A stretch of DNA of 63,590 nt, filler included, from Octopus bimaculoides (lineage: Eukaryota), in the NCBI RefSeq assembly GCF_001194135.2. It is 4 parts of 4 records of this genome, joined end to end, with 100 filler letters (N's around TTAATTAATTAA, not from the genome) between each part and the next. Parts side by side here need not be neighbours in the genome. Positions count along the whole stretch, not along the records: positions 1 to 19,512 come from NC_068981.1; 3 more parts are not named here. One strand, written 5' to 3'. Both the position numbers and the translations under genes were made by a program. Of the stretch, positions 1,400 through 19,512 are shown piece after piece; within the stretch, counting starts at the first letter, position 1, and every line of letters begins with the position of its first letter. The notes under the pieces were generated by a model that worked only from the letters and a program-made list of their open reading frames with translations, made no database searches and was not told where the DNA came from.

Positions 1400-1790
1400 C
1401 CTGCCAATTTGTTGTCTCCATAATTGTCTCCAGAACAACATTATCCAATGTAGTTCTTTACTTTCTAAATATAGTAAAGTATAATTTGAGGGGAATTTGG
1501 TTGCTATTCCTAGCAGGAAGAGTGGCCACGTAGAGGCTTCTTCAGTGACTCATAGTGATATTAGATCTTGTTGTTATCGTTTAACCCTGGATCAATCCGA
1601 ATCGAGAAGACCTTTGATCGAAGATTTCTTGCCGTGACCATCTCGCCTTCCTTTTCTGGCATAGTGTATCTAGAATTACTCCATTCAGCATGTATTTCCT
1701 TTTCTAAGACAGTAGGGAGTAATTTGAAAGATATTTGGCTGTTATTTCTAGCAGGTCGAGCATCGACGTAGAGGCTCCTTCATTGATTTC
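1400..1790 (-). mobile_element. Two tandem copies of family E (CAA-tailed repeat, no tRNA head)
   Basis: The motif atttggYtgYtattYctagcagg…acgtagaggct occurs at about 1495-1540 and 1733-1778, about 237 bp apart. Homologous copies lie at 6815-7020, 12365-12445 and 56950-57775. Confidence 0.7.
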
Positions 1791-2041
1791 TTATATCATT
1801 AAGCAGTAGTGGTATGTAAGAAATCAATACTTAATCACAGAAATCGATAACATTAGAAGAAACCAGGGATCAGAACAGCTTGTTATTTACTCTTTTACAA
1901 CAATAAGAATGTCTGAACAACGGAAAAATTTCACTGCAAAAAAAACAACATAAAAAACAAAAAGCAGACAAACAAACAAAAACAAAATAAAACAACAAAA
2001 ACAGCCCCTTCTCAAAAAACAAACAAACAAACAAACAAGTG

Positions 2042-2200
2042 GTCATGTCATGTAGTTAAGAAGTTCACTTTGCAACCACGCGATTTCGGGTTCAGTCCCA
2101 CTGCACGGCACCTAAAGTAACAGTCTTATACTGTAAACCTGGGTCAACCAATATCTTGTGAGTGTTTGGTAGACGGAAACTGTGTGGAAGCCCGTCGTAT
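2042..2200 (+). mobile_element. Family-C SINE head (tRNA-like, CORE-like)
   Basis: gttaagaagttcactttgcaaccacgcgatttcgggttcagtccca…ggtagacggaaactg…gaagcccgtcgtat followed by microsatellite. Matches heads at 8130, 13490, 20130 and 53478. Confidence 0.75.
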
Positions 2201-2244: not shown

Positions 2245-2692
2245 ATAGGCTTCAGGCGTGGCTGTGTGGTAAGAAGCTTGCTTCCGGTATAGCGTTTTGT
2301 TTGGTTCAACTGCGGTCTTTGTGAATAACACATGTGCTTTTTGGTTGTCTTAGCGGTGCGACGTTTTCCCTCTTGTTTAATGGAGGGGCGTCGGGTGAGG
2401 AGCTGTGAAGGCCTGAATTGTTCAGAATTTGTAAACTACCCTTCTTCGGACTTTGTTGTCGTCTGAGGAGGAGATGGTGAAGTGTTTGAAAAGAATAGAC
2501 GAGAAAATGGAAACAAGACGTTATGCTGTAGTGGCAGAAGAAAAGAGTGAAGACGTGAGTTTGGAGGATTTGAGTGAATTTAAAAACATGTTTAAAAGGG
2601 AGGGGAACGAAGTGAATGTGTTTCCCCAACAAAGAAGTTTTAAAGGAGAAAAGGGAATAAAACAAATGCCTGAAACAAATAAAAGAATAATA

Positions 2693-3953
2693 CAGGGGTT
2701 GGACAAAATAATGGAAACACCTAGCATCATAGCATCATAATTTTGAAATATCTTTAAAACCGTCAAACGCTTGTTTATTTTTATGTTTTTTTTTATTTAT
2801 TATTAGTGTTGCTTAAAATGTTTTGCTAAAATTGTTGTTTCTTTTCAGATATCATCAGAAAAAGGTAATTAAAATTCATTAAAATGATAGATCTATCGGA
2901 CTTTCAAAGAGATTAAACNNNNNNNNNNNNNNNNNNNNNNNNNNNNNNNNNNNNNNNNNNNNNNNNNNNNNNNNNNNNNNNNNNNNNNNNNNNNNNNNNN
3001 NNNNNNNNNNNNNNNNNNNNNNNNNNNNNNNNNNNNNNNNNNNNNNNNNNNNNNNNNNNNNNNNNNNNNNNNNNNNNNNNNNNNNNNNNNNNNNNNNNNN
3101 NNNNNNNNNNNNNACAGTATCCAAAATTACTGCAGAGCTTAATGAGCACCTCGAGAACCCTGTCTCCATCAAAACTGTTCACCGGGAGCTTCACAAAACC
3201 GGATTTCACGGGAGGGCTGTAATCAGAAAACCACTACTTTCAAAAACAAACGTTGCAAAGCGTTTAGACTGGAGAATTGGTCCGTAGAGCAGTAGAAGAA
3301 TGTTATTTTCTCGGACGAGTCATCCTTTACCTTATTTCCGACCACCGGCCGAATATACGTGTGGAGACAGCCAAAAGAAGCATTTGACCCAGACTGCCTT
3401 CTTCCAACTGTTAAATATAGAGGAGGATCTGTGATGATCGGGGTGAGGTTGGGGCTATATCTTGGAAGTCCGAAGGCCCAATGGTTTCCCTTTATGGCAG
3501 AATTAATAGTCAAGACTGTTTAAATATTTTATCTGGTCAAATTCATCCCATGGTTGCGGAACTGTTTGCGGAGGGAAGCGCAATCTTTCAGGATGATTAT
3601 ACACCAATTCACACAGCTAAAGTTGTTATTAAATGGTACGAGGAACATTCTAGTGAAGTTGAACATCTTATCTGGCCACAATAGTCCCCAGATCTCAAAA
3701 TTATTGAACATTTATGATGCATTTTAGAAAAAACAAATAAGGAGTCGATATCCTCCACCATCATCTCTACAAGAACTGGAGACTGTTTTAGCTGAAGAAG
3801 GGACAAAAATTCCTTTGGAAACAATTCAAACATTGTATGAATCCATACCGCATAGAATTCAAGCTGTAATTACTGCCAAAGACAGTCCTACCCCATATTA
3901 AAATAAATTTGTTTGAAGTTTCTCGGTGTTTCCATTATTTTGTCCAACTTCTG
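2693..3953 (+). mobile_element. Complete but inactivated Tc1-like DNA transposon (DD34E)
   Basis: 29-bp TIRs at 2693-2721 (caggggttggacaaaataatggaaacacc) and 3925-3953 with 2 mismatches, and TA on both sides (2691-2, 3954-5). Transposase remnant 2884-3901 shows MIDLSDFQR, FSDESSF, FQDDYTPIH and SPDLKIIEHL, with stops and frameshifts and an N gap at 2919-3113. AATAAA follows the stop. Confidence 0.93.
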
Positions 3954-4046
3954 TATATACACACATACAGACACACACATATATAGCTGTGTGAATATGC
4001 GTGCCTGTATGTGTGCTGCGCATGTGTGTACGTATGAATGCGTATC

Positions 4047-4256
4047 TCAACAACACTTAGCTACTGGTGTTGGTTTGTTTACATCCTCAAGACATAGCGG
4101 TTCACTGAAAGAGACAGACAGAATAAGTACCATACATAAAAAATGGAGAACAGGTACGGGGGCGGACGTGTTCCCCCCCCCCGACTAAAAAAACCCTTCA
4201 AAGCGGTGCTCCAGCATGGCTACAGTCCAATGACTGAAACAAGTAAAAGACAAAAG
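4047..4256 (+). mobile_element. Family-C SINE 3' module
   Basis: …ttagcggttc…gaataagtac…aagcggtgctccagcatggctacagtccaatgactgaaacaagtaaaaga, also seen at 7930, 19346, 20725, 39985 and 42775. Confidence 0.75.
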
Positions 4257-4976: not shown

Positions 4977-5196
4977 CACCACAACCACCAACACTACTAC
5001 TACCACCACCNNNNNNNNNNNNNNNNNNNNNNNNNNNNNNNNNNNNNNNNNNNNNNNNNNNNNNNNNNNNNNNNNNNNNNNNNNNNNNNNNNNNNNNNNN
5101 NNNNNNNNNNNNNNNNNNNNNNNNNNNNNNNNNNNNNNNNNNNNNNNNNNNNNNNNNNNNNNNNNNNNNNNNNNNNNNNNNNNNNNNNNNNNNNNN

Positions 5197-5914: not shown

Positions 5915-6301
5915 GTGGAGGCGCAATGGCCCAGTCGTTAGGGCAGCGGACTCGTGGTCATAGGATCGCGGTTTCGATTCCCAGACCGGGCGTTGTGAGT
6001 GTTTATTGAGCGAAAACACCTAAAGCACCACGAGGCTCCGGCAGGGGATGGTGGCGAACCCTGCTGTACTCTTTCACCACAACTTTCTCTCACTCTTACT
6101 TCCTGTTCCTGTTATGCTTGTAATTCAAAGGGTCAGCCTTGTCACACTGTGTCACGCTGAATATCCCCGCGAACTACGTTATGGATACACGTGTCTGTGG
6201 AGTGCTCAGCCACTTGCACGTTAATTTCACGAGCAGGCTGTTCCGTTGATCGGATCAACTGGAACCCTCGACGTCATAAGCGATGGAGTGCTAACAACAA
6301 C
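5915..6301 (+). mobile_element. Full-length family-A SINE with 12-bp TSD
   Basis: tRNA-like head with A box tggcccagtcg and B box gtttcgattcc, and a CAA tail. TSD agtcacacaact at 5903-5914 and 6302-6313. Confidence 0.92.
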
Positions 6302-6814
6302 AGTCACACAACTATACCTACGTCTGATTTTGCAGAAAGTAAAAGCATATTTTTGTCGCCACGTCTGGAATTGTAATTCTTATGCTCTCATGCAACTATT
6401 AGATTGCCTTCAAGAAAATATCATTTATTAAAGAAACATGCTATCAGAAACTGCCTCAAATTTCCGATTCGCCTTCAAGCCAGTTCATATCTTTCTCTCT
6501 CGTTTGTTTGATGGATGGTTCTTTTTTGAGAAAACAAATAATAATCGATATGCAGACAGCTTTTTGTTTTTTATTACTTTTTTAACCTGGTTACCAATCT
6601 GAATTTTGTTCGTGCGTCTTAAGAAAGAATATAAAAAAGAAATGTCGTGTTAACGTTAGATTTGTGAATTTTAAGTGGAGAAATACTCGTTTTAAACTCC
6701 AAAAGTAAACAAATATAATTAGATATGTTCAGTCCCGATTAAATTTCTTTGGAAAGATAAAAAAATGATTTGAAGATTTCAAAACACGTTTATAAGAGTC
6801 GAAAACACAAAGCG

Positions 6815-7020
6815 TCTATACATAGTCAGCCGACTTACTAGAAATAGCAATAAAATATGCCTGAACTCACACCCAGTCGTTTTAAAAAGGAAGGGACACA
6901 TTTGATAATGTCATCCGAGATATGCAATCCCCAAGAGAAGAACAGGTTGGTTATGGGTCGAATGATATCCAACATAGGATTGACCTGGGGACAAACACAA
7001 AAACAACAAACTCAACAACA
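6815..7020 (+). mobile_element. Degraded full-length family-E copy
   Basis: actagaaatagcaataaaat…gggacacatttgataatg…gattgacctggggacaaacacaaaaacaacaa, ending in a CAA-rich tail. Confidence 0.6.
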
Positions 7021-7057
7021 GAAGCTGTTTGAGTACTACAGATCGAACTCCTCTAAA

Positions 7058-7245: not shown

Positions 7246-7929
7246 AAGAACTTCTCTAAATTCGATTGATCTCTATGTTAATCCATATTAAATATAAAAT
7301 GTTAAGATAAGCATATAGACACGCATATATANNNNNNNNNNNNNNNNNNNNNNNNNNNNNNNNNNNNNNNNNNNNNNNNNNNNNNNNNNNNNNNNNNNNN
7401 NNNNNNNNNNNNNNNNNNNNNNNNNNNNNNNNNNNNNNNNNNNNNNNNNNNNNNNNNNNNNNNNNNNNNNNNNNNNNNNNNNNNNNNNNNNNNNNNNNNN
7501 NNNNNNNNNNNNNNNNNNNNNNNNNNNNNNNNNNNNNNNNNNNNNNNNNNNNNNNNNNNNNNNNNNNNNNNNNNNNNNNNNNNNNNNNNNNNNNNNNNNN
7601 NNNNNNNNNNNNNNNNNNNNNNNNNNNNNNNNNNNNNNNNNNNNNNNNNNNNNNNNNNNNNNNNNNNNNNNNNNNNNNNNNNNNNNNNNNNNNNNNNNNN
7701 NNNNNNNNNNNNNNNNNNNNNNNNNNNNNNNNNNNNNNNNNNNNNNNNNNNNNNNNNNNNNNNNNNNNNNNNNNNNNNNNNNNNNNNNNNNNNNNNNNNN
7801 NNNNNNNNNNNNNNNNNNNNNNNNNNNNNNNNNNNNNNNNNNNNNNNNNNNNNNNNNNNNNNNNNNNNNNNNNNNNNNNNNNNNNNNNNNNNNNNNNNNN
7901 NNNNNNNNNNNNNNNNNNNNNNNNNNNNA

Positions 7930-8280
7930 CTTAGCGGTTCGGCAAAAGAGACCGATAGAATAAGTACTAGGCTTACAAAGAATAAGTCATGTGGTCGATT
8001 TGCTCGACTAAAGGCGGTGCTCCAGCATGGCCACAGTCAAATGACTGAAACAAGTAAAAGAGAGAAAGAGTAAGAGTATGTATATATGTATGTATATATG
8101 TATGTATGTATGTATGTATATCGTATGTAGGATTGGTTTTACGGTAAAAAGTTTGTTTCTCAACCTACATGGCTCCTGGTTCAGTTCAAATGCGTGGAAC
8201 CTGGAGCAAGTGTCCTCTACTATAGCCCCAGGCCGATCACTGTCTTGTGAATGAATTTGGTAGACGGAAACAGCGTGGAA
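7930..8280 (+). mobile_element. Family-C 3' module (7930-8075) followed by a family-C head (about 8130-8280)
   Basis: ttagcggttcggcaaaagagaccgatagaataagtac…aatgactgaaacaagtaaaaga, then a degraded head ending ggtagacggaaac. Confidence 0.75.
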
Positions 8281-9577: not shown

Positions 9578-10261
9578 ACAAGAAAAAATAAAATTACAGT
9601 ACTAATTAGATGATAGTAACAGAAATAATGTTAATAATAGCTAATTTGATAATAATAAAAAGAAAAAATGCAATTGTAGAAACAAAGCTGCGTGTACTCC
9701 GGGAAATAAATTTTCTGAAAAAACATGAAGCAAATAATTCGCATATATAGGTGCATCGTCTCACTTCCTTTTCAAAAAATCGATGGCGTAGTCATATTGC
9801 ATCATTTCAGGATAAAAACAAAAGGCACAGCACGTCTCTTGCCAACATAATATGGAGTCTGAAGGAAAAGAAAATACAACATAGCATATATGTTTGTGAG
9901 TAATAAAAACTGCGTACACATACGATGGGAACTTCAGATTATGCAACAGAGACATTGTGTATATTATTATTATTATATAAGGAAGAATTAATTAACTGAC
10001 ATTCGTAGATCATTATGAGATAAAAAAAAAAAAACTTGAGGGAATATGGAAAAATATTTAATAGAGAACATCTAATTGGTTTACTAACATAAGCAAATAT
10101 GTTAATAGATGTACACATCTATAAAATGAGTGTGCATGTATCTACATCTATATTTCTGTATGTATGTGAATATGTAAATATATTCATATATTTATGAATG
10201 TTTACGTATACCGGATCATTTTATGACTATATGATAATTGTAACTCAGTCGATATGCATTG

Positions 10262-10542: not shown

Positions 10543-11549
10543 TACTCACACGTACGAACACTATTGGCTCACGCACATCTACATACACATACAAAGGACA
10601 ATTTGCAATTTGCATGTGTGTATGTGTGTGTGTAATTGGAGGGTGATATGTGTACATATGCGCACGATAGTCATATTGATCTTTAATACTTGGCGGTTGC
10701 CAGTTTTAAAAGAAAATAGTTAACGTGTTAAAGGCTCATACCAACTTACTGGAATTTATTGGTGACGACAGAAATGTATTTTGTTTCTTCTTGAAGCCTT
10801 GAAAATTCCACGATAAGAAGCACTAACGGTTTTGAAAATCGATTTTAAGCAGTATCAAGGTTTCTTCCAATAACTGTTTTATTGATAAGAAAAAAAATAA
10901 AAACAAACAAAAACTGATGCATACTGGCTGACAAAGGAGTTTGTTTGGTATAATATTGTTGACCAACTAGCATAGCACAACTATCCTCGTTTATCATTGG
11001 CAATGGTTAGCTTCCACAAAAAACTCCAAACAAATCAGTGATAAATGATAAGAGAATATACGGGTAAAATGCGTTTCATTCCAAAACCCCAAGTTGTCCT
11101 GGTCATTGTGGGCGGTTCAAGCAGAATCTCTAACTGATGACCTACCCGTGTAAACATAGATCTATTCGTGATAAGCGTAACAGTTAGCCTAGCGTGGATC
11201 AGTGATGAATGAAACAGTGATAAACGAGAATAGATGTGGTAAAAGTTTATTGTTACTATCAAATATTCATCAGGTTGAAGAACCCAACGGCTGCGATGAT
11301 TCTTGTGATGGGCAAGGATTTTCTATGTTGTTGCAATATCCCCAAGAAATGGCAACCAAACCCGAGTCTCTGCCATATGAGAGAGAGAGAGAGAGAGAAA
11401 AAAAAAACCGAATTATTTATTGGGTAAAATAGTCTGTGATAAACTGTCTGAAAAAACTTCGGATGGTCACGATTGAAATGCATTTCAGCATAAAGTCTCC
11501 TTGACCATGGATGATTTAAGACATGGTAACACGATAACAATATTATTTT

Positions 11550-11799
11550 TGAAGTAGTTGTATGCTGTCAACTTAATGTGACAGTCCTCCGAAGGGAATA
11601 ATACTAATGTTGGTTAGACATAGGAAGCTTCACCGCTTCCTGTCGGCCTTGACATATTTCCTGTGTCTTTATGTTTACAAGGGCACAGGAAATGTGTCAA
11701 GCCCGACAGGAAGCGGTGCAGCTTCCCAGGTCTAACCAACTGTAGTATTAGTCCCTTCAGGGGACTGTCACTTTAAGTTGACAGCATACAACTACTTCA
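11550..11799. mobile_element. Roughly 250-bp fold-back (palindromic) MITE-like element
   Basis: The left arm tgaagtagttgtatgctgtcaacttaa… pairs almost base for base with the right arm …ttaagttgacagcatacaactacttca. Arms are about 118 bp around a loop tttatgtttacaa. A half copy lies at 22513-22643. Confidence 0.8.
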
Positions 11800-12343: not shown

Positions 12344-12364
12344 TGAAGAAAACACAGGGAAAGA

Positions 12365-12445
12365 AAGAGGGGAGCTTTTACGAAGTAGCTTGACATGCTA
12401 GAAATAGTAGCTAAATCTCCTTGAAATCATACTCTACCATCTTAA
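12365..12445 (+). mobile_element. Family-E 5' fragment
   Basis: ggggagcttttacgaagtagcttgacatgctagaaatagtagctaaatctccttgaaatcatactctaccatctt. Confidence 0.65.
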
Positions 12446-13489
12446 AGAGACCTGTCCTGTTTCGTTGCATTTTGAGTTCAAATCCTGCCTTAGACTACTA
12501 CGGAGGTAGATTTAATCCCCTGTACGGTGCCCGATGTACCACCACCACCACCACCGCAAGGAATTTTAGCTGCATTTAGTAGTGTCCATTATGTGGCATG
12601 CTTTCGGGCTAGTCACCGGTTAGGGGACAGCAGTTTCTTCCCTCTCTCCTATCAGGCTTGGAAGACTTCTAAAGAGTTATGGGCAATGTCTTTCCTCCCA
12701 ACTAAAAGGACATATTGGAAAAGACAAGAAAAACAGAATTGTCACGGTTGGAATATCCTTAATTATTTGTTGTGTTTGGTATTGAGACAGGTGTGAGAGT
12801 TGGCTAAGTGCAAGGTGGTTGGCTTGACATTGTAGACATGGTGGAAGAAGCAACAGAGACTAATACAGTCTAACACAAACTCAACCAGTTGCAATAACTA
12901 TAGCGGAAGTAAGTATAGTAGTAACATCAACAGCAACACGAGCAATAAAAGCAGCAGCAGCAGCAGTAAGGTATTAATGAAGATGATAGAAAATGTAGCT
13001 CGTAATGAAAACAAGAATAATAAAATAAAAAGGAAACGATTAATTTTTAAAGGATTGTGTTGTGGACATAAATGGATTTTAAAGTGTCTCCGAGCCTCCC
13101 CTCCAAAAACAAATGACAAAATGCTCCCGCAACAACCCGTCTGCCCCTTTAGCCCCACCCCAAAAGAAACAGCTTGGATGAATCTAAGTTACTGGATTAC
13201 TAATTTGAACAAATAAGGACTGAGGAGTCTATTTTTATCAATGTGTGAGCGTCACCGATAAACTGTGGGTATCTTTTACAACTGAAAAGGTTGGAAGAAA
13301 ATAAGATAAAATTGAAAAAAATAAAAAATGGTGGAAATTTTCATCTTATTTTGTAGAATTAGGAACGATATTTAGTGGCGAGAAGTGCAATTGGTGTTTA
13401 ACGTTAGAGATGTTAACGTCTATATAAGGAGCTGGAGATGAACGACTGGAATAGCCAAGGTCTAATGAGAGTTTGAAGATTTTGTTCAG

Positions 13490-13835
13490 AAGCATGGCTG
13501 TGTGGTTAACAAAATTGCTTTAGAACTACGTGGTTTTGGGATCAGTCTCAGTGTGCGACACCTTAGACATGTGTCTTCTACAATAGCACCAGGCTAACCA
13601 AATCATTGGGAGTGAATTTGATAGGCGGAAACTGTGTGTATGTATGTATGTGTATGAGCTTCTTTTTATATGTCTCCATACCGTTTGACAACCGCTGTTG
13701 GTTTGTTTATTCTCCCGTAATTTAGCGGTTTGGAAAAATGACCGAAAGAATAAGTACTTAACTTTTAAAAAATCCTTCAAGTGGGGACCCCAGCATGGTC
13801 GTAGACCTATGATTGTAAGAGGTAAAAGAATAAAC
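13490..13835 (+). mobile_element. Complete, degraded family-C SINE (head, internal microsatellite, 3' module)
   Basis: The head agcatggctgtgtggtt…, a (TATG)n-like core and the 3' module ttgacaaccg…ccccagcatggtcg…taaaagaataa are contiguous. Confidence 0.75.
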
Positions 13836-14508: not shown

Positions 14509-15098
14509 TATTTTGGCAGTTGCATGGCGAGAGGTTTGGCTGTTGTAGATTTTATATCAGCGGAGCCGTGTATAGCGAATTGAGTTATAGAAAATAATAA
14601 TTTACTGATAAAAGGAAGAAGACACCTTACTTTTGATTACTATTATATATGAACGCTGTCATTTGATGTGAAGAGGTTGGATCAATATATTGAAGCAAAC
14701 GTCTTTACTATTAGGTTGACAGATAAATTGGTTTTTTTTTCATTCTTAAAAAAAATTCAATCCTTTCTAATGTTATTTGAATTAACATGAAAAATATCTT
14801 TTTCATTGCATTTTTTTTTGGAAATCTACTCTTACTCTACAACGTTTGTTTATCGTTTTTGAAATTAAGATAAACTTCACTTCTTTTTAGACATACGATG
14901 ATGGAGTACTAAGTCGAACCCCCCCCCCNNNNNNNNNNNNNCCCCCACACACACACACAAAACAATGAATTTAATCTGACAACTCAATATTTATAACCCG
15001 GAGTGACGAAAGTCATTCGCGACGGATTTGGAACCCAGAACGTAAAGGGACGTAACTTAATACCATAATAATTTTTTTTCTTATACGTACAATATCTG

Positions 15099-15480
15099 GT
15101 GGAGGCGCAATGGCCCAGTGGTTAGGGCAGCGGACTCACGGTCATAGGATCGCGGTTTCGATTCCCAGACCGAGCGTTGTGAGTGTTTATTGAGCGAAGA
15201 CACCTAAAGCTCCACGAGGCTTCGGCAGGGGATGGTGGCGAACCCTGCTGTACTCTTTCACCACAACTTTCTCTCACTCTATCTTCCTGTTTCTGTTGTG
15301 CCTGTAATTCAAAGGGCCAGCCTTGTCACACTGTGTCACGCTGAATATCCCCGAGAACTACGTTACGGGTACACGTATGTGTGGAGTGTTCAGCCACTTG
15401 CACGTTAATTTCACGAGCTAGATGTTCCGTTGATCGGATCAACTGGAACACTCGACGTCGTAAGCGACGGAGTGCCAACA
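15099..15480 (+). mobile_element. Full-length family-A SINE with 10-bp TSD
   Basis: A box tggcccagtgg and B box gtttcgattcc. TSD acaatatctg at 15089-15098 and 15481-15490. Confidence 0.92.
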
Positions 15481-15517
15481 ACAATATCTGACATTTTCGT
15501 GAAGCGGGGATAATCGA

Positions 15518-17108: not shown

Positions 17109-17367
17109 GTGTTGTTGGCACTCCGTCGCTTACGACGTCGAGGGTTCCAGTTGATCCGATCAACGGAACAGCCTGCTCGTGAAATTAACGTGGAAGTGGA
17201 TGAACACTCCACAGACACGTGTACCCTTAACGTAGTTCTCGGGGGTATTCAGCGTGACACAGTGTGACAAGGCTGACCCTTTCAATTACAGGCACAACAG
17301 AAACAGGAAGTAAGAGTGAGAGAAAGTTGTGGTGAAAGAGTACAGCAGGGTTCGCCACCATCCCCTG
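17109..17367 (-). mobile_element. Family-A SINE (3' two-thirds; head lost in gap)
   Basis: Near-identical to 15099-15480 in reverse complement. Confidence 0.9.
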
Positions 17368-18095
17368 NNNNNNNNNNNNNNNNNNNNNNNNNNNNNNNNN
17401 NNNNNNNNNNNNNNNNNNNNNNNNNNNNNNNNNNNNNNNNNNNNNNNNNNNNNNNNNNNNNNNNNNNNNNNNNNNNNNNNNNNNNNNNNNNNNNNNNNNN
17501 NNNNNNNNNNNNNNNNNNNNNNNNNNNNNNNNNNNNNNNNNNNNNNNNNNNNNNNNNNNNNNNNNNNNNNNNNNNNNNNNNNNNNNNNNNNNNNNNNNNN
17601 NNNNNNNNNNNNNNNNNNNNNNNNNNNNNNNNNNNNNNNNNNNNNNNNNNNNNNNNNNNNNNNNNNNNNNNNNNNNNNNNNNNNNNNNNNNNNNNNNNNN
17701 NNNNNNNNNNNNNNNNNNNNNNNNNNNNNNNNNNNNNNNNNNNNNNNNNNNNNNNNNNNNNNNNNNNNNNNNNNNNNNNNNNNNNNNNNNNNNNNNNNNN
17801 NNNNNNNNNNNNNNNNNNNNNNNNNNNNNNNNNNNNNNNNNNNNNNNNNNNNNNNNNNNNNNNNNNNNNNNNNNNNNNNNNNNNNNNNNNNNNNNNNNNN
17901 NNNNNNNNNNNNNNNNNNNNNNNNNNNNNNNNNNNNNNNNNNNNNNNNNNNNNNNNNNNNNNNNNNNNNNNNNNNNNNNNNNNNNNNNNNNNNNNNNNNN
18001 NNNNNNNNNNNNNNNNNNNNNNNNNNNNNNNNNNNNNNNNNNNNNNNNNNNNNNNNNNNNNNNNNNNNNNNNNNNNNNNNNNNNNNNNNNNNNNN

Positions 18096-18154
<59 letters not shown>

Positions 18155-19139
18155 AATGTATGCATGTATCTAGCTATATATCTATTCACACACGCACACA
18201 AGTATATGTATGTATATATCTACACACATATATACATACGCATGTATGTATGCATGTATGTATGCATGTATGTATGTGTATGTTATGCGCATAATCAATA
18301 CTGTTAAAACAACAAGTTTTATAATATGAAATTTTTAGAGAGACATTTCCCATTGTAATAAATTCTGAATGGCCTTGTAGGAAAATAAACAATTTCTCAT
18401 TTCCGATATTTTAGTCAAAAATAATTAATATTTTAAAATATAACGCCCCACAGACTTGTATTTCTCATTCTTTAGTTAAATCTTATTTATTTTCCTTCAA
18501 CTCTTTTTCTTCATTATATATTATAATGATTCTAAAGGTCAGTGAACTGATAAAACGTCTTGTTGTATTCAGTTATGTCCCTTTATCTTCTGAGTTCAAA
18601 TCCTGCCTTTGCTAACTAATCCTTTCATTCTTATGGGGAATCTAATAATTAAGCATTTGGTTGATGTAACTGGCACTACTAGCCGCTTCCGTCAAACAGT
18701 GTGTGTGTGTGTGTGTGTGTGTGTATTATTCAAACAGTTTGATTCGGATTCCATGCTACTTCAAGTTTCGAAGTATAACATCCGAAGTGTCCAGTATTAT
18801 ATATCCATTACGGCCTATCTTATCAATCGGTTTCGTGCTAGGTATTCATTGGAGTGTTTGGTAAAAAACCCGATTATATAACCCTGCGCTCATCACAGGT
18901 AGCCGATATGGAACGAAATATGGCGACTACCATATATATGTATATATATAAAGAATAAGGAGAAAATGGAGAAGTAATTAATAAAATATTATTTATTAAT
19001 TATAAAATATGACATCTCTGACAGCTGTTTCGTTTTATATAGTTATCTTATAGTTGAACTTTCTGTGGATTGGTAACTAACCGGTATTTTCATTGGATTT
19101 TATTATCCCTTAATGAGGTTTATAACCTTTATTTGTCGA

Positions 19140-19142
19140 TCG

Positions 19143-19220
<78 letters not shown>

Positions 19221-19512
19221 ATATATATACATACATATATATATATGTATGTATATATGTATATATATGTATATAAATATATATGTATGTATATATATAC
19301 ATGTATGTATATATATATATGTATGTATATATATATATACATACATAAGGCGGTGCTCCAGCATGGCCGCATTCAAATGACTGAAACAAGTAAAAGAGTA
19401 AAAGAGTATATATATGTATGTATGTATGTATGTATATATATGTATGTATGTTTATATATGTATGTATATATAAATATGTATATGTATATATATGTATGTA
19501 TATATGTATAAT
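19140..19512. repeat. Compound (CTAT)/(CTGT)/(TA)/(TATG) microsatellite with a family-C tail end at 19346-19405
   Basis: Visible directly. Confidence 0.9.

What the first reader, a model, noticed from the sequence alone, without database searches (positions are those of the whole stretch)
1488..1790. Family E: tRNA-less, CAA-tailed repeat whose 5' end fits an HDV-like ribozyme fold
Seen in sequence: on the sense (minus) strand both copies read [P1 5']-[P2 5']-cc-TCTACGT-gg-[P1 3']-ga-c-CTGCTA-GAAA/GGAA-TAGCA-(g/a)CcAAA-t-[P2 3']. Copy 1725-1790 keeps a 7-bp P2 (tgaagga/tctttca) but has lost P1 and one P3 pair. Copy 1488-1551 keeps P1 gagt/actc, P3 cc/gg and a GNRA-capped P4, but its P2 is poor. 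Established: HDV/CPEB3-type ribozymes use this nested double-pseudoknot order, a 7-nt L3 with U and G five positions apart (CPEB3 has UUCACGU) and a CNAA J4/2 carrying the catalytic C, and they process 5' ends of R2/RTE retrotransposons. Inference: E is a non-autonomous retroposon using a self-cleaving 5' end instead of a Pol III tRNA head. No single copy here is intact.
Basis: partly seen in the sequence, partly recalled or inferred. Interest (0 to 1): 0.8.

Follow-up and report, generated by a model that had tools for sequence, protein, structure and literature searches.

The report
Old octopus retroposon, ribozyme head unproven
The flagged repeat is a real, old, non-coding "jumping" element of an octopus genome, but its resemblance to a self-cutting HDV-type RNA is pieced together from different decayed copies and does not hold for the family's inferred ancestral sequence.

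Summary
They belong to a real dispersed family: five copies of a ~225-235-nt unit in this 19.5-kb Octopus piece, on both strands. Each has a shared ~70-nt 5' head, and the two full-length copies also share a 3' box and a CAA/ACAA-rich tail. No coding capacity or small-RNA-derived head was found, so "non-autonomous retroposon" is supported.

The ribozyme claim is not supported.
- Only two helices are ancestral: the closing helix "P2" (7 bp in the consensus) and the GNRA-capped hairpin "P4".
- P1 is 4 bp in copy B only. P3 is intact in B, and in C through one compensatory pair.
- Rfam's CPEB3 model hits copy B alone, at 23.1 bits (threshold 35; window-wide E = 0.033).
- Seven of B's ten private substitutions happen to match the CPEB3 consensus. 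Two of them create B's P1 and P3; three break P2.
- The family consensus matches the model at 25 of 63 positions, against 33 for B.
- A structural descriptor relaxed to B's quality finds 4 sites here, against 2.8 ± 1.6 in shuffles.
- Covariation does not exceed shuffles.

I could not fetch more octopus copies, so a genome-wide consensus remains the decisive test. I put the ribozyme at about 0.2.

The parts
1566..1790 (-). Copy A, full-length unit (225 nt): head, body, 3' box and tail
   Evidence: blastn; nhmmer (HMM positions 2-207); aligns with copy D end to end
1725..1790 (-). Closing helix 'P2' 1776-1782 with 1725-1731 (7 bp). GCC 1773-1775. TCTACGT 1766-1772. Hairpin TGCTA-GAAA-TAACA 1740-1753. 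GCCAAATA 1732-1739. No P1; one of three P3 pairs.
   Evidence: the RNAfold MFE keeps the closing helix
1585..1598 (-). Copy A 3' box GGATTGATCCAGGG, shared with copy D at 6977-6990
1567..1584 (-). Copy A tail TTAAACGATAACAACAAG (CAA-rich)
1408..1551 (-). Copy B, shorter unit (144 nt) ending in GGAGACAATTATGGAGACAACAAA (1408-1431). It lies 15 nt downstream of copy A's tail.
1489..1564 (-). Sub-threshold Rfam CPEB3_ribozyme (RF00622) match on copy B: 23.1 bits against gathering 35. GAGT 1548-1551 with ACTC 1520-1523. GCC-TCTACGT-GGC 1525-1537. Hairpin 1502-1515. ACCAAAT 1495-1501.
   Evidence: 7 of B's 33 matches to the model consensus are private to B
12359..12449 (+). Copy C, head plus about 25 nt of body, after which homology stops. 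GCT-TTTACGA-AGT gives a 3-bp P3 (G-U, C-G, U-A). Hairpin 12396-12409. GCTAAAT has U where the putative catalytic C would be.
   Evidence: no HDV-family hit in Rfam
6801..7024 (+). Copy D, full-length unit with 3' box 6977-6990 and tail 6991-7024. GAGTCG at 6796-6801 just upstream pairs with CGACTT at 6831-6836, a different register from B's P1.
   Evidence: no Rfam hit
11311..11545 (+). Copy E5, very decayed full-length copy with an internal (GA)n expansion. TCTATGT is a CpG-decayed TCTACGT; ACCAAAC is retained; no P2, P3 or P1.
   Evidence: nhmmer E=0.036 with the head profile and E=6e-6 with the full-length profile; sequence; alignment

Best explanation
Family E is an old, dead family of short (~225-235 nt) non-coding, LINE-dependent retroposons in an Octopus genome. 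It lacks a small-RNA head, so it is a tRNA-less SINE in the broad sense, of the type described as bipartite non-autonomous LINEs or LP-SINEs.

Shown:
- Five dispersed copies on both strands.
- A common unit with a ~70-nt head, a body, a conserved 3' box and a CAA/ACAA-rich tail.
- No coding capacity.

Inferred:
- The RNA was copied into new sites by a partner LINE's reverse transcriptase, which recognised the 3' box and tail (target-primed reverse transcription).
- The head is most likely the 5'-terminal piece of that LINE's 5' UTR. It folds as a domain closed by a 7-bp long-range helix and contains a GNRA-capped hairpin. It would serve transcription and/or RNP assembly, as proposed for mollusc LP-SINEs.
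- The HDV/CPEB3 resemblance is best read as a chance composite. The ancestral head supplies the P2-like and P4-like helices, an ACGU loop motif and CCAAAU. Copy B's own later substitutions add a 4-bp P1 and the third P3 pair.
For: - Family membership and unit structure.
- Source organism: a SINE ORF in the window matches a UniRef Octopus bimaculoides entry.
- No coding or small-RNA origin.
- Consensus of the heads: GAAATCAATGAAGGAGCCTCTACGTAGTCGCTCGACCTGCTAGAAATAGCAGCCAAAT ATCCTTCA. It gives a perfect 7-bp P2 and a 5-bp P4, but P3 = G-U, C-G, C x A and no P1.
- Per-helix counts: P4 90% paired, P2 64%, the three inner P1 pairs 58%. Covariation score 0.254 against 0.224 +/- 0.033 in shuffles (109 of 500 shuffles as high).
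- P1 candidates exist only in B (4 bp) and D (6 bp, non-homologous register).
- B matches the CPEB3 consensus at 33 of 63 positions. A matches 27, C 21, D 23, the family consensus 25.
- Seven of B's matches are private to B (columns 7, 17, 31, 38, 47, 62, 63) out of 10 private states in all. About a third would be expected, so binomial P is about 0.02 (my calculation).
- A is B's closest relative (74% identity), so these states are derived in B.
- A structure-only descriptor is at chance level.
Against: - The Rfam CPEB3 hit is unusual for a 19.5-kb window (E=0.033 over 4227 families). It lies in sense orientation at the 5' end of the unit, where retrotransposon HDV-like ribozymes sit.
- The ancestral closing helix falls exactly where CPEB3's P2 strands align.
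- TCTACGT has the U...G spacing of L3, and the hairpin is followed by CCAAA, where the catalytic C and the A-rich J4/2 belong.
- C's P3 shows one compensatory pair (C-G to U-A).
- An active R2 ribozyme with a 4-bp P1 is known (PMC3774820).
- The head is no better conserved than the body (58% against 59% between A and D), so there is no positive evidence for any head function.
- No significant target-site duplications were found and no partner LINE was identified.
Confidence: 0.6

Rival explanations
1. The master copies of family E carried an active HDV/CPEB3-like self-cleaving ribozyme as their first ~70 nt. It trimmed upstream read-through RNA and defined the 5' end of the retrotransposition intermediate. 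The copies seen here are decayed relics that have each lost different helices.
For: - CPEB3_ribozyme CM hit on copy B: 23.1 bits, E=0.033 window-wide and 7.5e-4 on 441 nt.
- Correct order of elements.
- L3-like UCUACGU against CPEB3's UUCACGU.
- C followed by AAA after a GNRA hairpin.
- A perfect 7-bp P2 in the consensus.
- One compensatory P3 pair in copy C.
- Position at the 5' end of a tailed retroposon.
- HDV-like ribozymes are established at the 5' ends of R2, RTE, L1Tc and others, and in non-autonomous derivatives such as R2 SIDEs and NARTc (PMC3414825, PMC3383444, PMC5786205).
Against: - P1 is absent from the consensus. In B it depends on a private A-to-G change.
- The third P3 pair in B is also private.
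- The same copy has private changes that break P2.
- Copies A, C and D give no HDV-family hit even in searches of 141-441 nt.
- No P1.1: J1/4 is UUCC in B, and GACC in the consensus gives at most one wobble.
- No covariation signal.
- The descriptor is at chance level.
- Nucleotides upstream of the putative G1 look partly shared between copies (TATAAGA in A and D; TA.GAGTC in B and D), which a 5'-end-defining cleavage would not leave.
Confidence: 0.2
2. The head is a functional structured RNA of another kind. It could be an unrecognised self-cleaving motif, or a protein-binding or IRES-like domain of the partner LINE built on a three-way junction. It would not be an HDV-type fold.
For: - The closing helix and the GNRA hairpin are the only consistently supported helices.
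- RNAfold of copy A gives a three-way junction.
- R2 5' RNA also serves protein binding and translation (review PMC6765202).
Against: - No Rfam family other than CPEB3 matches.
- The third hairpin seen in A (GUCGA/UCGAC) and in D (AGUC/GACU) is in different registers, so it is not conserved.
- Folding energies are ordinary, with z-scores from -0.3 to -1.6.
- The head is not better conserved than the body.
Confidence: 0.12
3. E is not a retroposon. It would be a DNA-transposon or MITE fragment, or a local tandem or segmental duplication.
For: Copies A and B lie head to tail 15 nt apart. No significant target-site duplications were found.
Against: - Copies occur at four separate loci on both strands.
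- There are no terminal inverted repeats.
- There is a one-sided CAA/ACAA tail.
- The sequence upstream of A is not a third unit: its alignment score falls within shuffles. This rules out a satellite array.
Confidence: 0.04

Closest known systems
Bipartite non-autonomous LINEs (e.g. RTESINE2 and WALLSI3 of RTE; also the Ingi, Vingi and R2 clades), Kojima 2018, PMC5786205
   Same: Short, ORF-less units made of a LINE-type 5' end and a LINE-type 3' end with tail. No tRNA, 5S or 7SL head. [quoted passage not shown]
   Different: No partner LINE was identified here, so derivation of head and tail from one LINE is untested. Whether octopus family E is already in Repbase or Dfam could not be checked.
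LP-SINEs of gastropods and bivalves (Lsa_2, Hdi/Hmi_LP, Sgl_LP), Matetovici et al. 2016, PMC4758252
   Same: Mollusc SINE-like elements with a ~68-70-bp non-tRNA head and 3' simple-repeat tails. The head is about the same size as E's 66-70-nt head.
   Different: The LP head is defined by homology to the 5' ends of Nimb-17_LMi, I-3_DR and RTE-9_CPB. The authors propose a promoter, not a ribozyme.
R2 SIDEs and T. cruzi NARTc (non-autonomous elements headed by an HDV-like ribozyme), PMC3414825, PMC3383444, PMC4035085
   Different: In those elements the ribozyme fold is complete and cleavage was shown in vitro. In E, P1 and P1.1 are missing from the consensus and nothing has been assayed.
Mammalian CPEB3 ribozyme (Rfam RF00622)
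   Same: Copy B aligns over the whole model. It shares GAAGC-U..ACGU-GC (the 3' end of P2, then P3 and L3) and C-AAUUC (J4/2 and the start of P2'), has a 3-bp P3 with a 7-nt L3, and has a weak or absent P1.1.
   Different: The score of 23.1 bits is below the gathering score of 35. P1 has 4 of 6 pairs. P4 is unrelated in sequence. The similarity is specific to copy B and largely due to its private substitutions: the consensus matches 25 of 63 positions against 33 for B.

Membership tests
HDV-like self-cleaving ribozymes (HDV, CPEB3, drz, R2 type) | Nested double-pseudoknot order P1-P2-P3-L3-P3'-P1'-J1/4-P4-J4/2-P2', all within one molecule | tested here: inconclusive
   The order can be drawn on copy B, and the Rfam alignment agrees. 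No copy, nor the consensus, has all the helices.
HDV-like self-cleaving ribozymes (HDV, CPEB3, drz, R2 type) | P1 of about 6-7 bp (rarely 4) starting at the cleavage site, with P1' immediately 3' of P3' (PMC3774820) | tested here: not met
   B has GAGT/ACTC, 4 bp, dependent on a private G. D has 6 bp in another register, 3 nt away from P3' and with no J1/4. A, C, E5 and the consensus have none.
HDV-like self-cleaving ribozymes (HDV, CPEB3, drz, R2 type) | 3-bp P3 closing a 7-8-nt L3 with the conserved U and G (reverse wobble) | tested here: inconclusive
   B: GCC/GGC with UCUACGU. C: GCU/AGU, with one compensatory pair. A has 1 of 3 pairs and the consensus 2 of 3. The L3 G is lost in D, and in E5 it is the C of the ACG motif that has decayed to T.
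HDV-like self-cleaving ribozymes (HDV, CPEB3, drz, R2 type) | P1.1 pairs between L3 and J1/4 | tested here: not met
   J1/4 is UUCC in B, with no pair to L3's C and U. The consensus GACC allows at most one U-G wobble (read from the sequences).
HDV-like self-cleaving ribozymes (HDV, CPEB3, drz, R2 type) | Catalytic C at the start of J4/2, followed by A-rich linker nucleotides | tested here: met
   GCCAAAU (A), ACCAAAU (B) and ACCAAAC (E5). C has GCUAAAU and D has AAUAAAAU. The consensus is CCAAAU. This is a sequence-level test only.
HDV-like self-cleaving ribozymes (HDV, CPEB3, drz, R2 type) | P2 of at least 5 bp joining the segment 5' of P3 to the segment 3' of J4/2 | tested here: met
   7 bp in A and in the consensus, 5 of 7 in C, 4 of 7 in B, 3 of 7 in D.
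HDV-like self-cleaving ribozymes (HDV, CPEB3, drz, R2 type) | Match to a curated covariance model at its gathering score | tested here: not met
   CPEB3 at 23.1 bits against 35, on copy B only. No hit from any other HDV-family model, and none on A, C or D.
HDV-like self-cleaving ribozymes (HDV, CPEB3, drz, R2 type) | Covariation supporting the helices | tested here: not met
   Four heads: covariation score 0.254 against 0.224 +/- 0.033, with 109 of 500 shuffles as high. Three pairs show a double change against 2.3 expected. Power is very low with so few copies.
HDV-like self-cleaving ribozymes (HDV, CPEB3, drz, R2 type) | Site-specific self-cleavage (2',3'-cyclic phosphate and 5'-OH products), abolished by mutating the catalytic C | not testable with these tools
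   Needs in vitro transcription and cleavage assays and RNA 5'-end mapping.
Non-autonomous non-LTR retroposon (SINE in the broad sense, or bipartite non-autonomous LINE) | Many dispersed copies of one short unit, in both orientations | tested here: met
   Five copies at four loci, three on the + strand and two on the - strand.
Non-autonomous non-LTR retroposon (SINE in the broad sense, or bipartite non-autonomous LINE) | 3' end with a simple-repeat or A-rich tail on one strand only | tested here: met
   A: TTAAACGATAACAACAAG. D: ACAAACACAAAAACAACAAACTCAACAACAGAAG. B..GGAGACAACAAA. E5..AACACGATAACAATA.
Non-autonomous non-LTR retroposon (SINE in the broad sense, or bipartite non-autonomous LINE) | Target-site duplications flanking the copies | tested here: inconclusive
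   The best candidate for A is ATACCACTACTG / ATATCACTATG, with local-alignment P=0.14 against shuffles. Nothing was found for B or D. The copies differ from each other by about 26-43% in the head.
Non-autonomous non-LTR retroposon (SINE in the broad sense, or bipartite non-autonomous LINE) | No protein-coding capacity | tested here: met
   Only short ORFs overlap the copies. There are no Pfam hits, and the ORF 1568-1771 has no homologue in the protein collection.
Canonical SINE (Pol III head derived from tRNA, 5S or 7SL) | 5' head derived from a small RNA, with A and B boxes | tested here: not met
   No tRNA, 5S, 7SL or snRNA match on the copies in Rfam at E<=10. ARAGORN finds none, but it also misses the window's tRNA-derived SINEs, so it is weak evidence.
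LP-SINE / bipartite non-autonomous LINE | Head and tail homologous to the 5' and 3' ends of an autonomous LINE | not testable with these tools
   No octopus or Repbase LINE library is reachable here, and no LINE fragment with this head or tail lies in the window.

The most novel reading that the evidence does not exclude
The ~70-nt head of family E descends from a CPEB3-type HDV-like ribozyme (L3 U-N-N-A-C-G-U, weak P1.1), and it is the same module as the cross-phylum ~68-bp 'LINE promoter' head of mollusc LP-SINEs and of Nimb and RTE LINEs. If so, those heads are self-cleaving ribozymes rather than, or as well as, promoters. CPEB3-like ribozymes would then be an old retrotransposon lineage, which bears on the unexplained origin of the mammalian CPEB3 ribozyme.
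Probability: 0.12. Interest if true: 0.65.

Novelty: new member of a known kind. Interest (0 to 1): 0.2.

Why it matters
If the ribozyme reading were right, E would add cephalopods, and an abundant SINE-like family, to the list of retroelements that use HDV-like self-cleavage to make their 5' ends. It might also link the mollusc LP-SINE head and the mammalian CPEB3 ribozyme to one retrotransposon module.

As the evidence stands, the finding is an ordinary decayed retroposon family. Its practical use is as a caution. A fold assembled from helices that survive in different decayed copies, together with a sub-threshold covariance-model hit on one copy, can arise from that copy's private mutations. 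It should be checked against the family consensus before being believed.

Tried and rejected
1. Fetching more octopus copies failed by every route.
- The antisense ORF of copy A has no relatives in the protein collection.
- Tc1 transposase relatives led only to contigs of other animals (L001-L006), which share the Tc1 but contain neither E nor the octopus SINE.
- The young-SINE ORF hit a single UniRef Octopus bimaculoides entry with no contig on record.
- Pattern scans of metagenome contigs (two patterns), viral contigs and prokaryote genomes gave nothing, or two chance matches (L007, L008) whose similarity does not extend beyond the pattern.

2. Tandem-array or retrozyme-like arrangement: the sequence upstream of A is not a third unit.

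3. Target-site duplications as a way to fix the 5' ends: none is significant.

4. An alternative 6-7-bp P1 (GAGTCG(A) with (T)CGACYT; 6 bp as read in copy D):
- It is attractive because of its G-U base pair and the conserved 3' strand.
- Its 5' strand is present only in D, possibly as flanking DNA, and partly in B.
- It leaves 3 nt between P3' and P1' and no J1/4, so it is non-canonical and was not adopted.

5. A third local hairpin (GUCGA/UCGAC in A, AGUC/GACU in D): the registers differ, so it is not conserved.

6. Head better conserved than body: it is not.

7. Thermodynamic stability: unremarkable.

8. Other ribozyme classes or small-RNA origins: no Rfam match.

Full report
**What is there.** The piece is non-coding, repeat-rich animal DNA of about 35-40% G+C, with assembly gaps and many microsatellites. 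An ORF inside a young tRNA-derived SINE in the window matches a UniRef entry of Octopus bimaculoides at 80% identity, so the source is an octopus or a close relative.

- Copy A (1790->1725) has TGAAGGA...TCTTTCA, GCC-TCTACGT, the hairpin TGCTA-GAAA-TAACA and GCCAAATA.
- Copy B (1551->1488) has GAGT...ACTC, GCC-TCTACGT-GGC, TGCTA-GGAA-TAGCA and ACCAAAT.

**The repeat family is real.** blastn of the region against the window finds two further copies on the plus strand: C at 12359-12449 and D at 6801-7024. nhmmer profiles recover all four, plus a fifth, very decayed copy at 11311-11545. That fifth copy scores E=0.036 with the head profile and 6e-6 with a full-length profile.

Core motifs recur far more often than in shuffles: 3 matches against 0.00 expected, and 2 against 0.05.

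A and D align over the whole ~225-235-nt unit. The unit comprises a head, a body, a 3' box GGATTGAYCYRGGG and a CAA/ACAA-rich tail. B is a shorter version ending in ..GGAGACAACAAA. C keeps the head and about 25 nt of body.

The sequence upstream of A is not another unit. A and B are therefore adjacent insertions, not a satellite array.

ORFs over the copies have no Pfam match, and the ORF 1568-1771 over copy A has no homologue. Rfam finds no tRNA, 5S, 7SL or snRNA on the copies.

The strand with the tail is the sense strand. "Tailed, tRNA-less, non-autonomous retroposon" is therefore well supported. Target-site duplications could not be shown: the best candidate has P=0.14.

**The one objective signal for a ribozyme.** Scanning the whole piece against all 4227 Rfam families returns CPEB3_ribozyme (RF00622) on copy B at 1564..1489 on the minus strand. 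The score is 23.1 bits against a gathering score of 35, with E=0.033 for the window and 7.5e-4 for a 441-nt search.

The alignment places GCC/GGC as P3, UCUACGU as L3 (CPEB3 has UUCACGU), 4 of 6 P1 pairs, the GGAA hairpin as P4 and ACC-AAAUUC as J4/2. No other HDV-family model matches. Copies A, C and D give no HDV-family hit even in very small searches.

**Why I do not take that signal as evidence about the family.** I mapped the CPEB3 consensus onto the alignment of the four heads.
- B matches the model at 33 of 63 positions. A matches 27, C 21, D 23 and the family consensus 25.
- Seven of B's matches are states that no other copy has (columns 7, 17, 31, 38, 47, 62, 63). At five of these seven columns the other three copies agree with each other.
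- B has only 10 such private states in total. About a third would be expected to match, so 7 of 10 gives binomial P of about 0.02 (my calculation).
- A is B's closest relative (74% identity), so these states are derived on B's own branch.

The private states include the G that makes GAGT (P1) and the C that completes P3. Three others (columns 17, 62, 63) destroy pairs of P2.

A simpler explanation is that the ancestor had P2 and P4 only, and that B drifted by chance towards the model.

**Helix-by-helix test.** The consensus of the heads gives a perfect 7-bp P2 (UGAAGGA/UCCUUCA) and a 5-bp GNRA-capped P4. Its P3 is G-U, C-G, C x A, and it has no P1.
- A search for any P1 of at least 4 bp finds GAGT/ACTC in B and GAGTCG/CGACTT in D. 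The latter is in a non-homologous register, 3 nt away from P3' and with no J1/4, and its 5' strand may be flanking DNA. A and C have nothing.
- P1.1 cannot form in B, where J1/4 is UUCC.
- On the four-copy alignment 73.7% of cells pair, but the structure was drawn from these same sequences. Covariation does not exceed shuffles (109-125 of 500 as high). Only P4 is robust, at 90% paired.
- A structural descriptor relaxed to B's quality finds 4 sites in the window, against 2.8 +/- 1.6 in dinucleotide shuffles. A canonical one finds none.
- Folding energies are ordinary.
- The head is not better conserved than the body: 58% against 59% between A and D.

**The 5' end.** A ribozyme that defines the 5' end predicts that homology between copies starts at G1.
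- Strict local alignments start only near P3 and L3.
- Looser alignments allow either a common start GAAA(U/A/G).A in A, C and D, or a shared TA.GAGUC in B and D together with TATAAGA in A and D. The second reading would put shared nucleotides upstream of the putative cleavage site.

With five old copies and no significant TSDs this cannot be settled. It neither supports nor refutes the model.

**What keeps the ribozyme idea alive.**
- The motif sits in sense orientation at the 5' end of a retroposon.
- The ancestral closing helix is exactly where P2 belongs.
- L3 has the U...G spacing, and a C followed by As comes after the hairpin.
- Copy C's P3 carries one compensatory change.
- R2 ribozymes tolerate a J1/4 of 0-2 nt, mismatches in P1 and, in one active case, a 4-bp P1 (PMC3774820).
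- HDV-like ribozymes are established at the 5' ends of several LINE clades and in their non-autonomous derivatives (PMC3414825, PMC3383444, PMC4035085, PMC5786205).

I therefore leave the ribozyme about a 0.2 probability.

**Comparison with what is known.** E works like a bipartite non-autonomous LINE or an LP-SINE. Matetovici et al. (PMC4758252) described mollusc SINEs whose first ~68-70 bp derive from LINE 5' ends shared by Nimb and RTE elements of a locust, zebrafish and a turtle, and proposed a promoter. Kojima (PMC5786205) showed that ORF-less bipartite derivatives of RTE, Ingi, Vingi and R2 keep the LINE 5' end, and pointed to 5' ribozymes as a possible reason.

**Limits.** All routes to more octopus DNA failed.

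**Verdict.**
- Observation: partly confirmed. The motifs and the family are real; the fold is not above chance.
- Interpretation: partly supported. The retroposon is supported; the ribozyme is not.
- Interest: low.

Noticed in passing
window 2691-3956: Decayed Tc1/mariner-type DNA transposon. Its 32-nt terminal inverted repeats (..GTTGGACAAAATAATGGAAACACC) are 94% identical. Transposase fragments at 3123-3958 carry stops and frameshifts, and the interior is cut by the N gap at 2919-3113. The closest proteins are 76-83% identical, and DNA 73-80% identical over a few hundred bases or more occurs in contigs of unrelated animals. Cluster members come from an amphipod and a fish, so this Tc1 lineage looks horizontally widespread.
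   Followed up: partly
window 5915-6300, 15099-15484, 17110-17367 (-), 210-357: Young tRNA-derived SINE (GTGGAGGCGCAATGGCCCAGT...). The longer copies are 94-95% identical to each other; the partial copy at 210-357 is 84-86% identical to them. An ORF inside it matches UniRef A0A0L8H1P9, an 'uncharacterized protein' of Octopus bimaculoides, which is therefore probably a spurious gene call inside a SINE. The match also identifies the source organism.
   Followed up: partly
window 11550-11799: Inverted repeat with 121-nt arms, 89% complementary and 8 nt apart, forming a long hairpin that looks MITE-like. It lies directly after the decayed E copy at 11311-11545. It accounts for the sub-threshold miRNA-family hits (mir-3173, mir-4716, mir-5595, mir-1788) at 11634-11715.
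   Followed up: no
window 4200-4255, 8011-8066, 13779-13834, 19347-19402: A repeated 56-nt segment (AAGGCGGTGCTCCAGCATGGCCACAGTC.AATGACTGAAACAAGTAAAAGA). At 8011 and 19347 it is followed by (TATG)n-type microsatellite. It may be the 3' part of another SINE family that seeds microsatellites.
   Followed up: no
window 1920-2200: A long (CAAA)n/(ACAA)n-type tail on the plus strand (1920-2039), belonging to another retroposon. It abuts the tRNA-like head of a further SINE (2040-2200, ..GGGTTCAGTCCCACTG..GAAGCCCGTCGTAT). CAAA-type tails seem to be the common currency of this genome's LINE partners.
   Followed up: no
window 12450-12520 and 12714-12757: Right after copy C's head the homology to E stops, and a tRNA B-box-like GAGTTCAAATCCTGCC appears. 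Copy C is either interrupted by another SINE or is a chimeric head-swap element. A weak nhmmer match to E's body (E=0.89) lies at 12714-12757.
   Followed up: no
window 18090-18300, 19200-19510, 8070-8125, 10145-10205: The top Rfam 'hits' of the window (mir-297, mir-3149, mir-1277, mir-466 and similar, all far below their gathering scores) fall on (TA)n/(TATG)n low-complexity DNA and are artefacts.
   Followed up: yes
window 2919-3113, 5011-5196, 7332-7928, 14929-14941, 17368-18095: Runs of N (assembly gaps), so the piece comes from a draft scaffold. Distances and element boundaries across these gaps are unreliable.
   Followed up: yes
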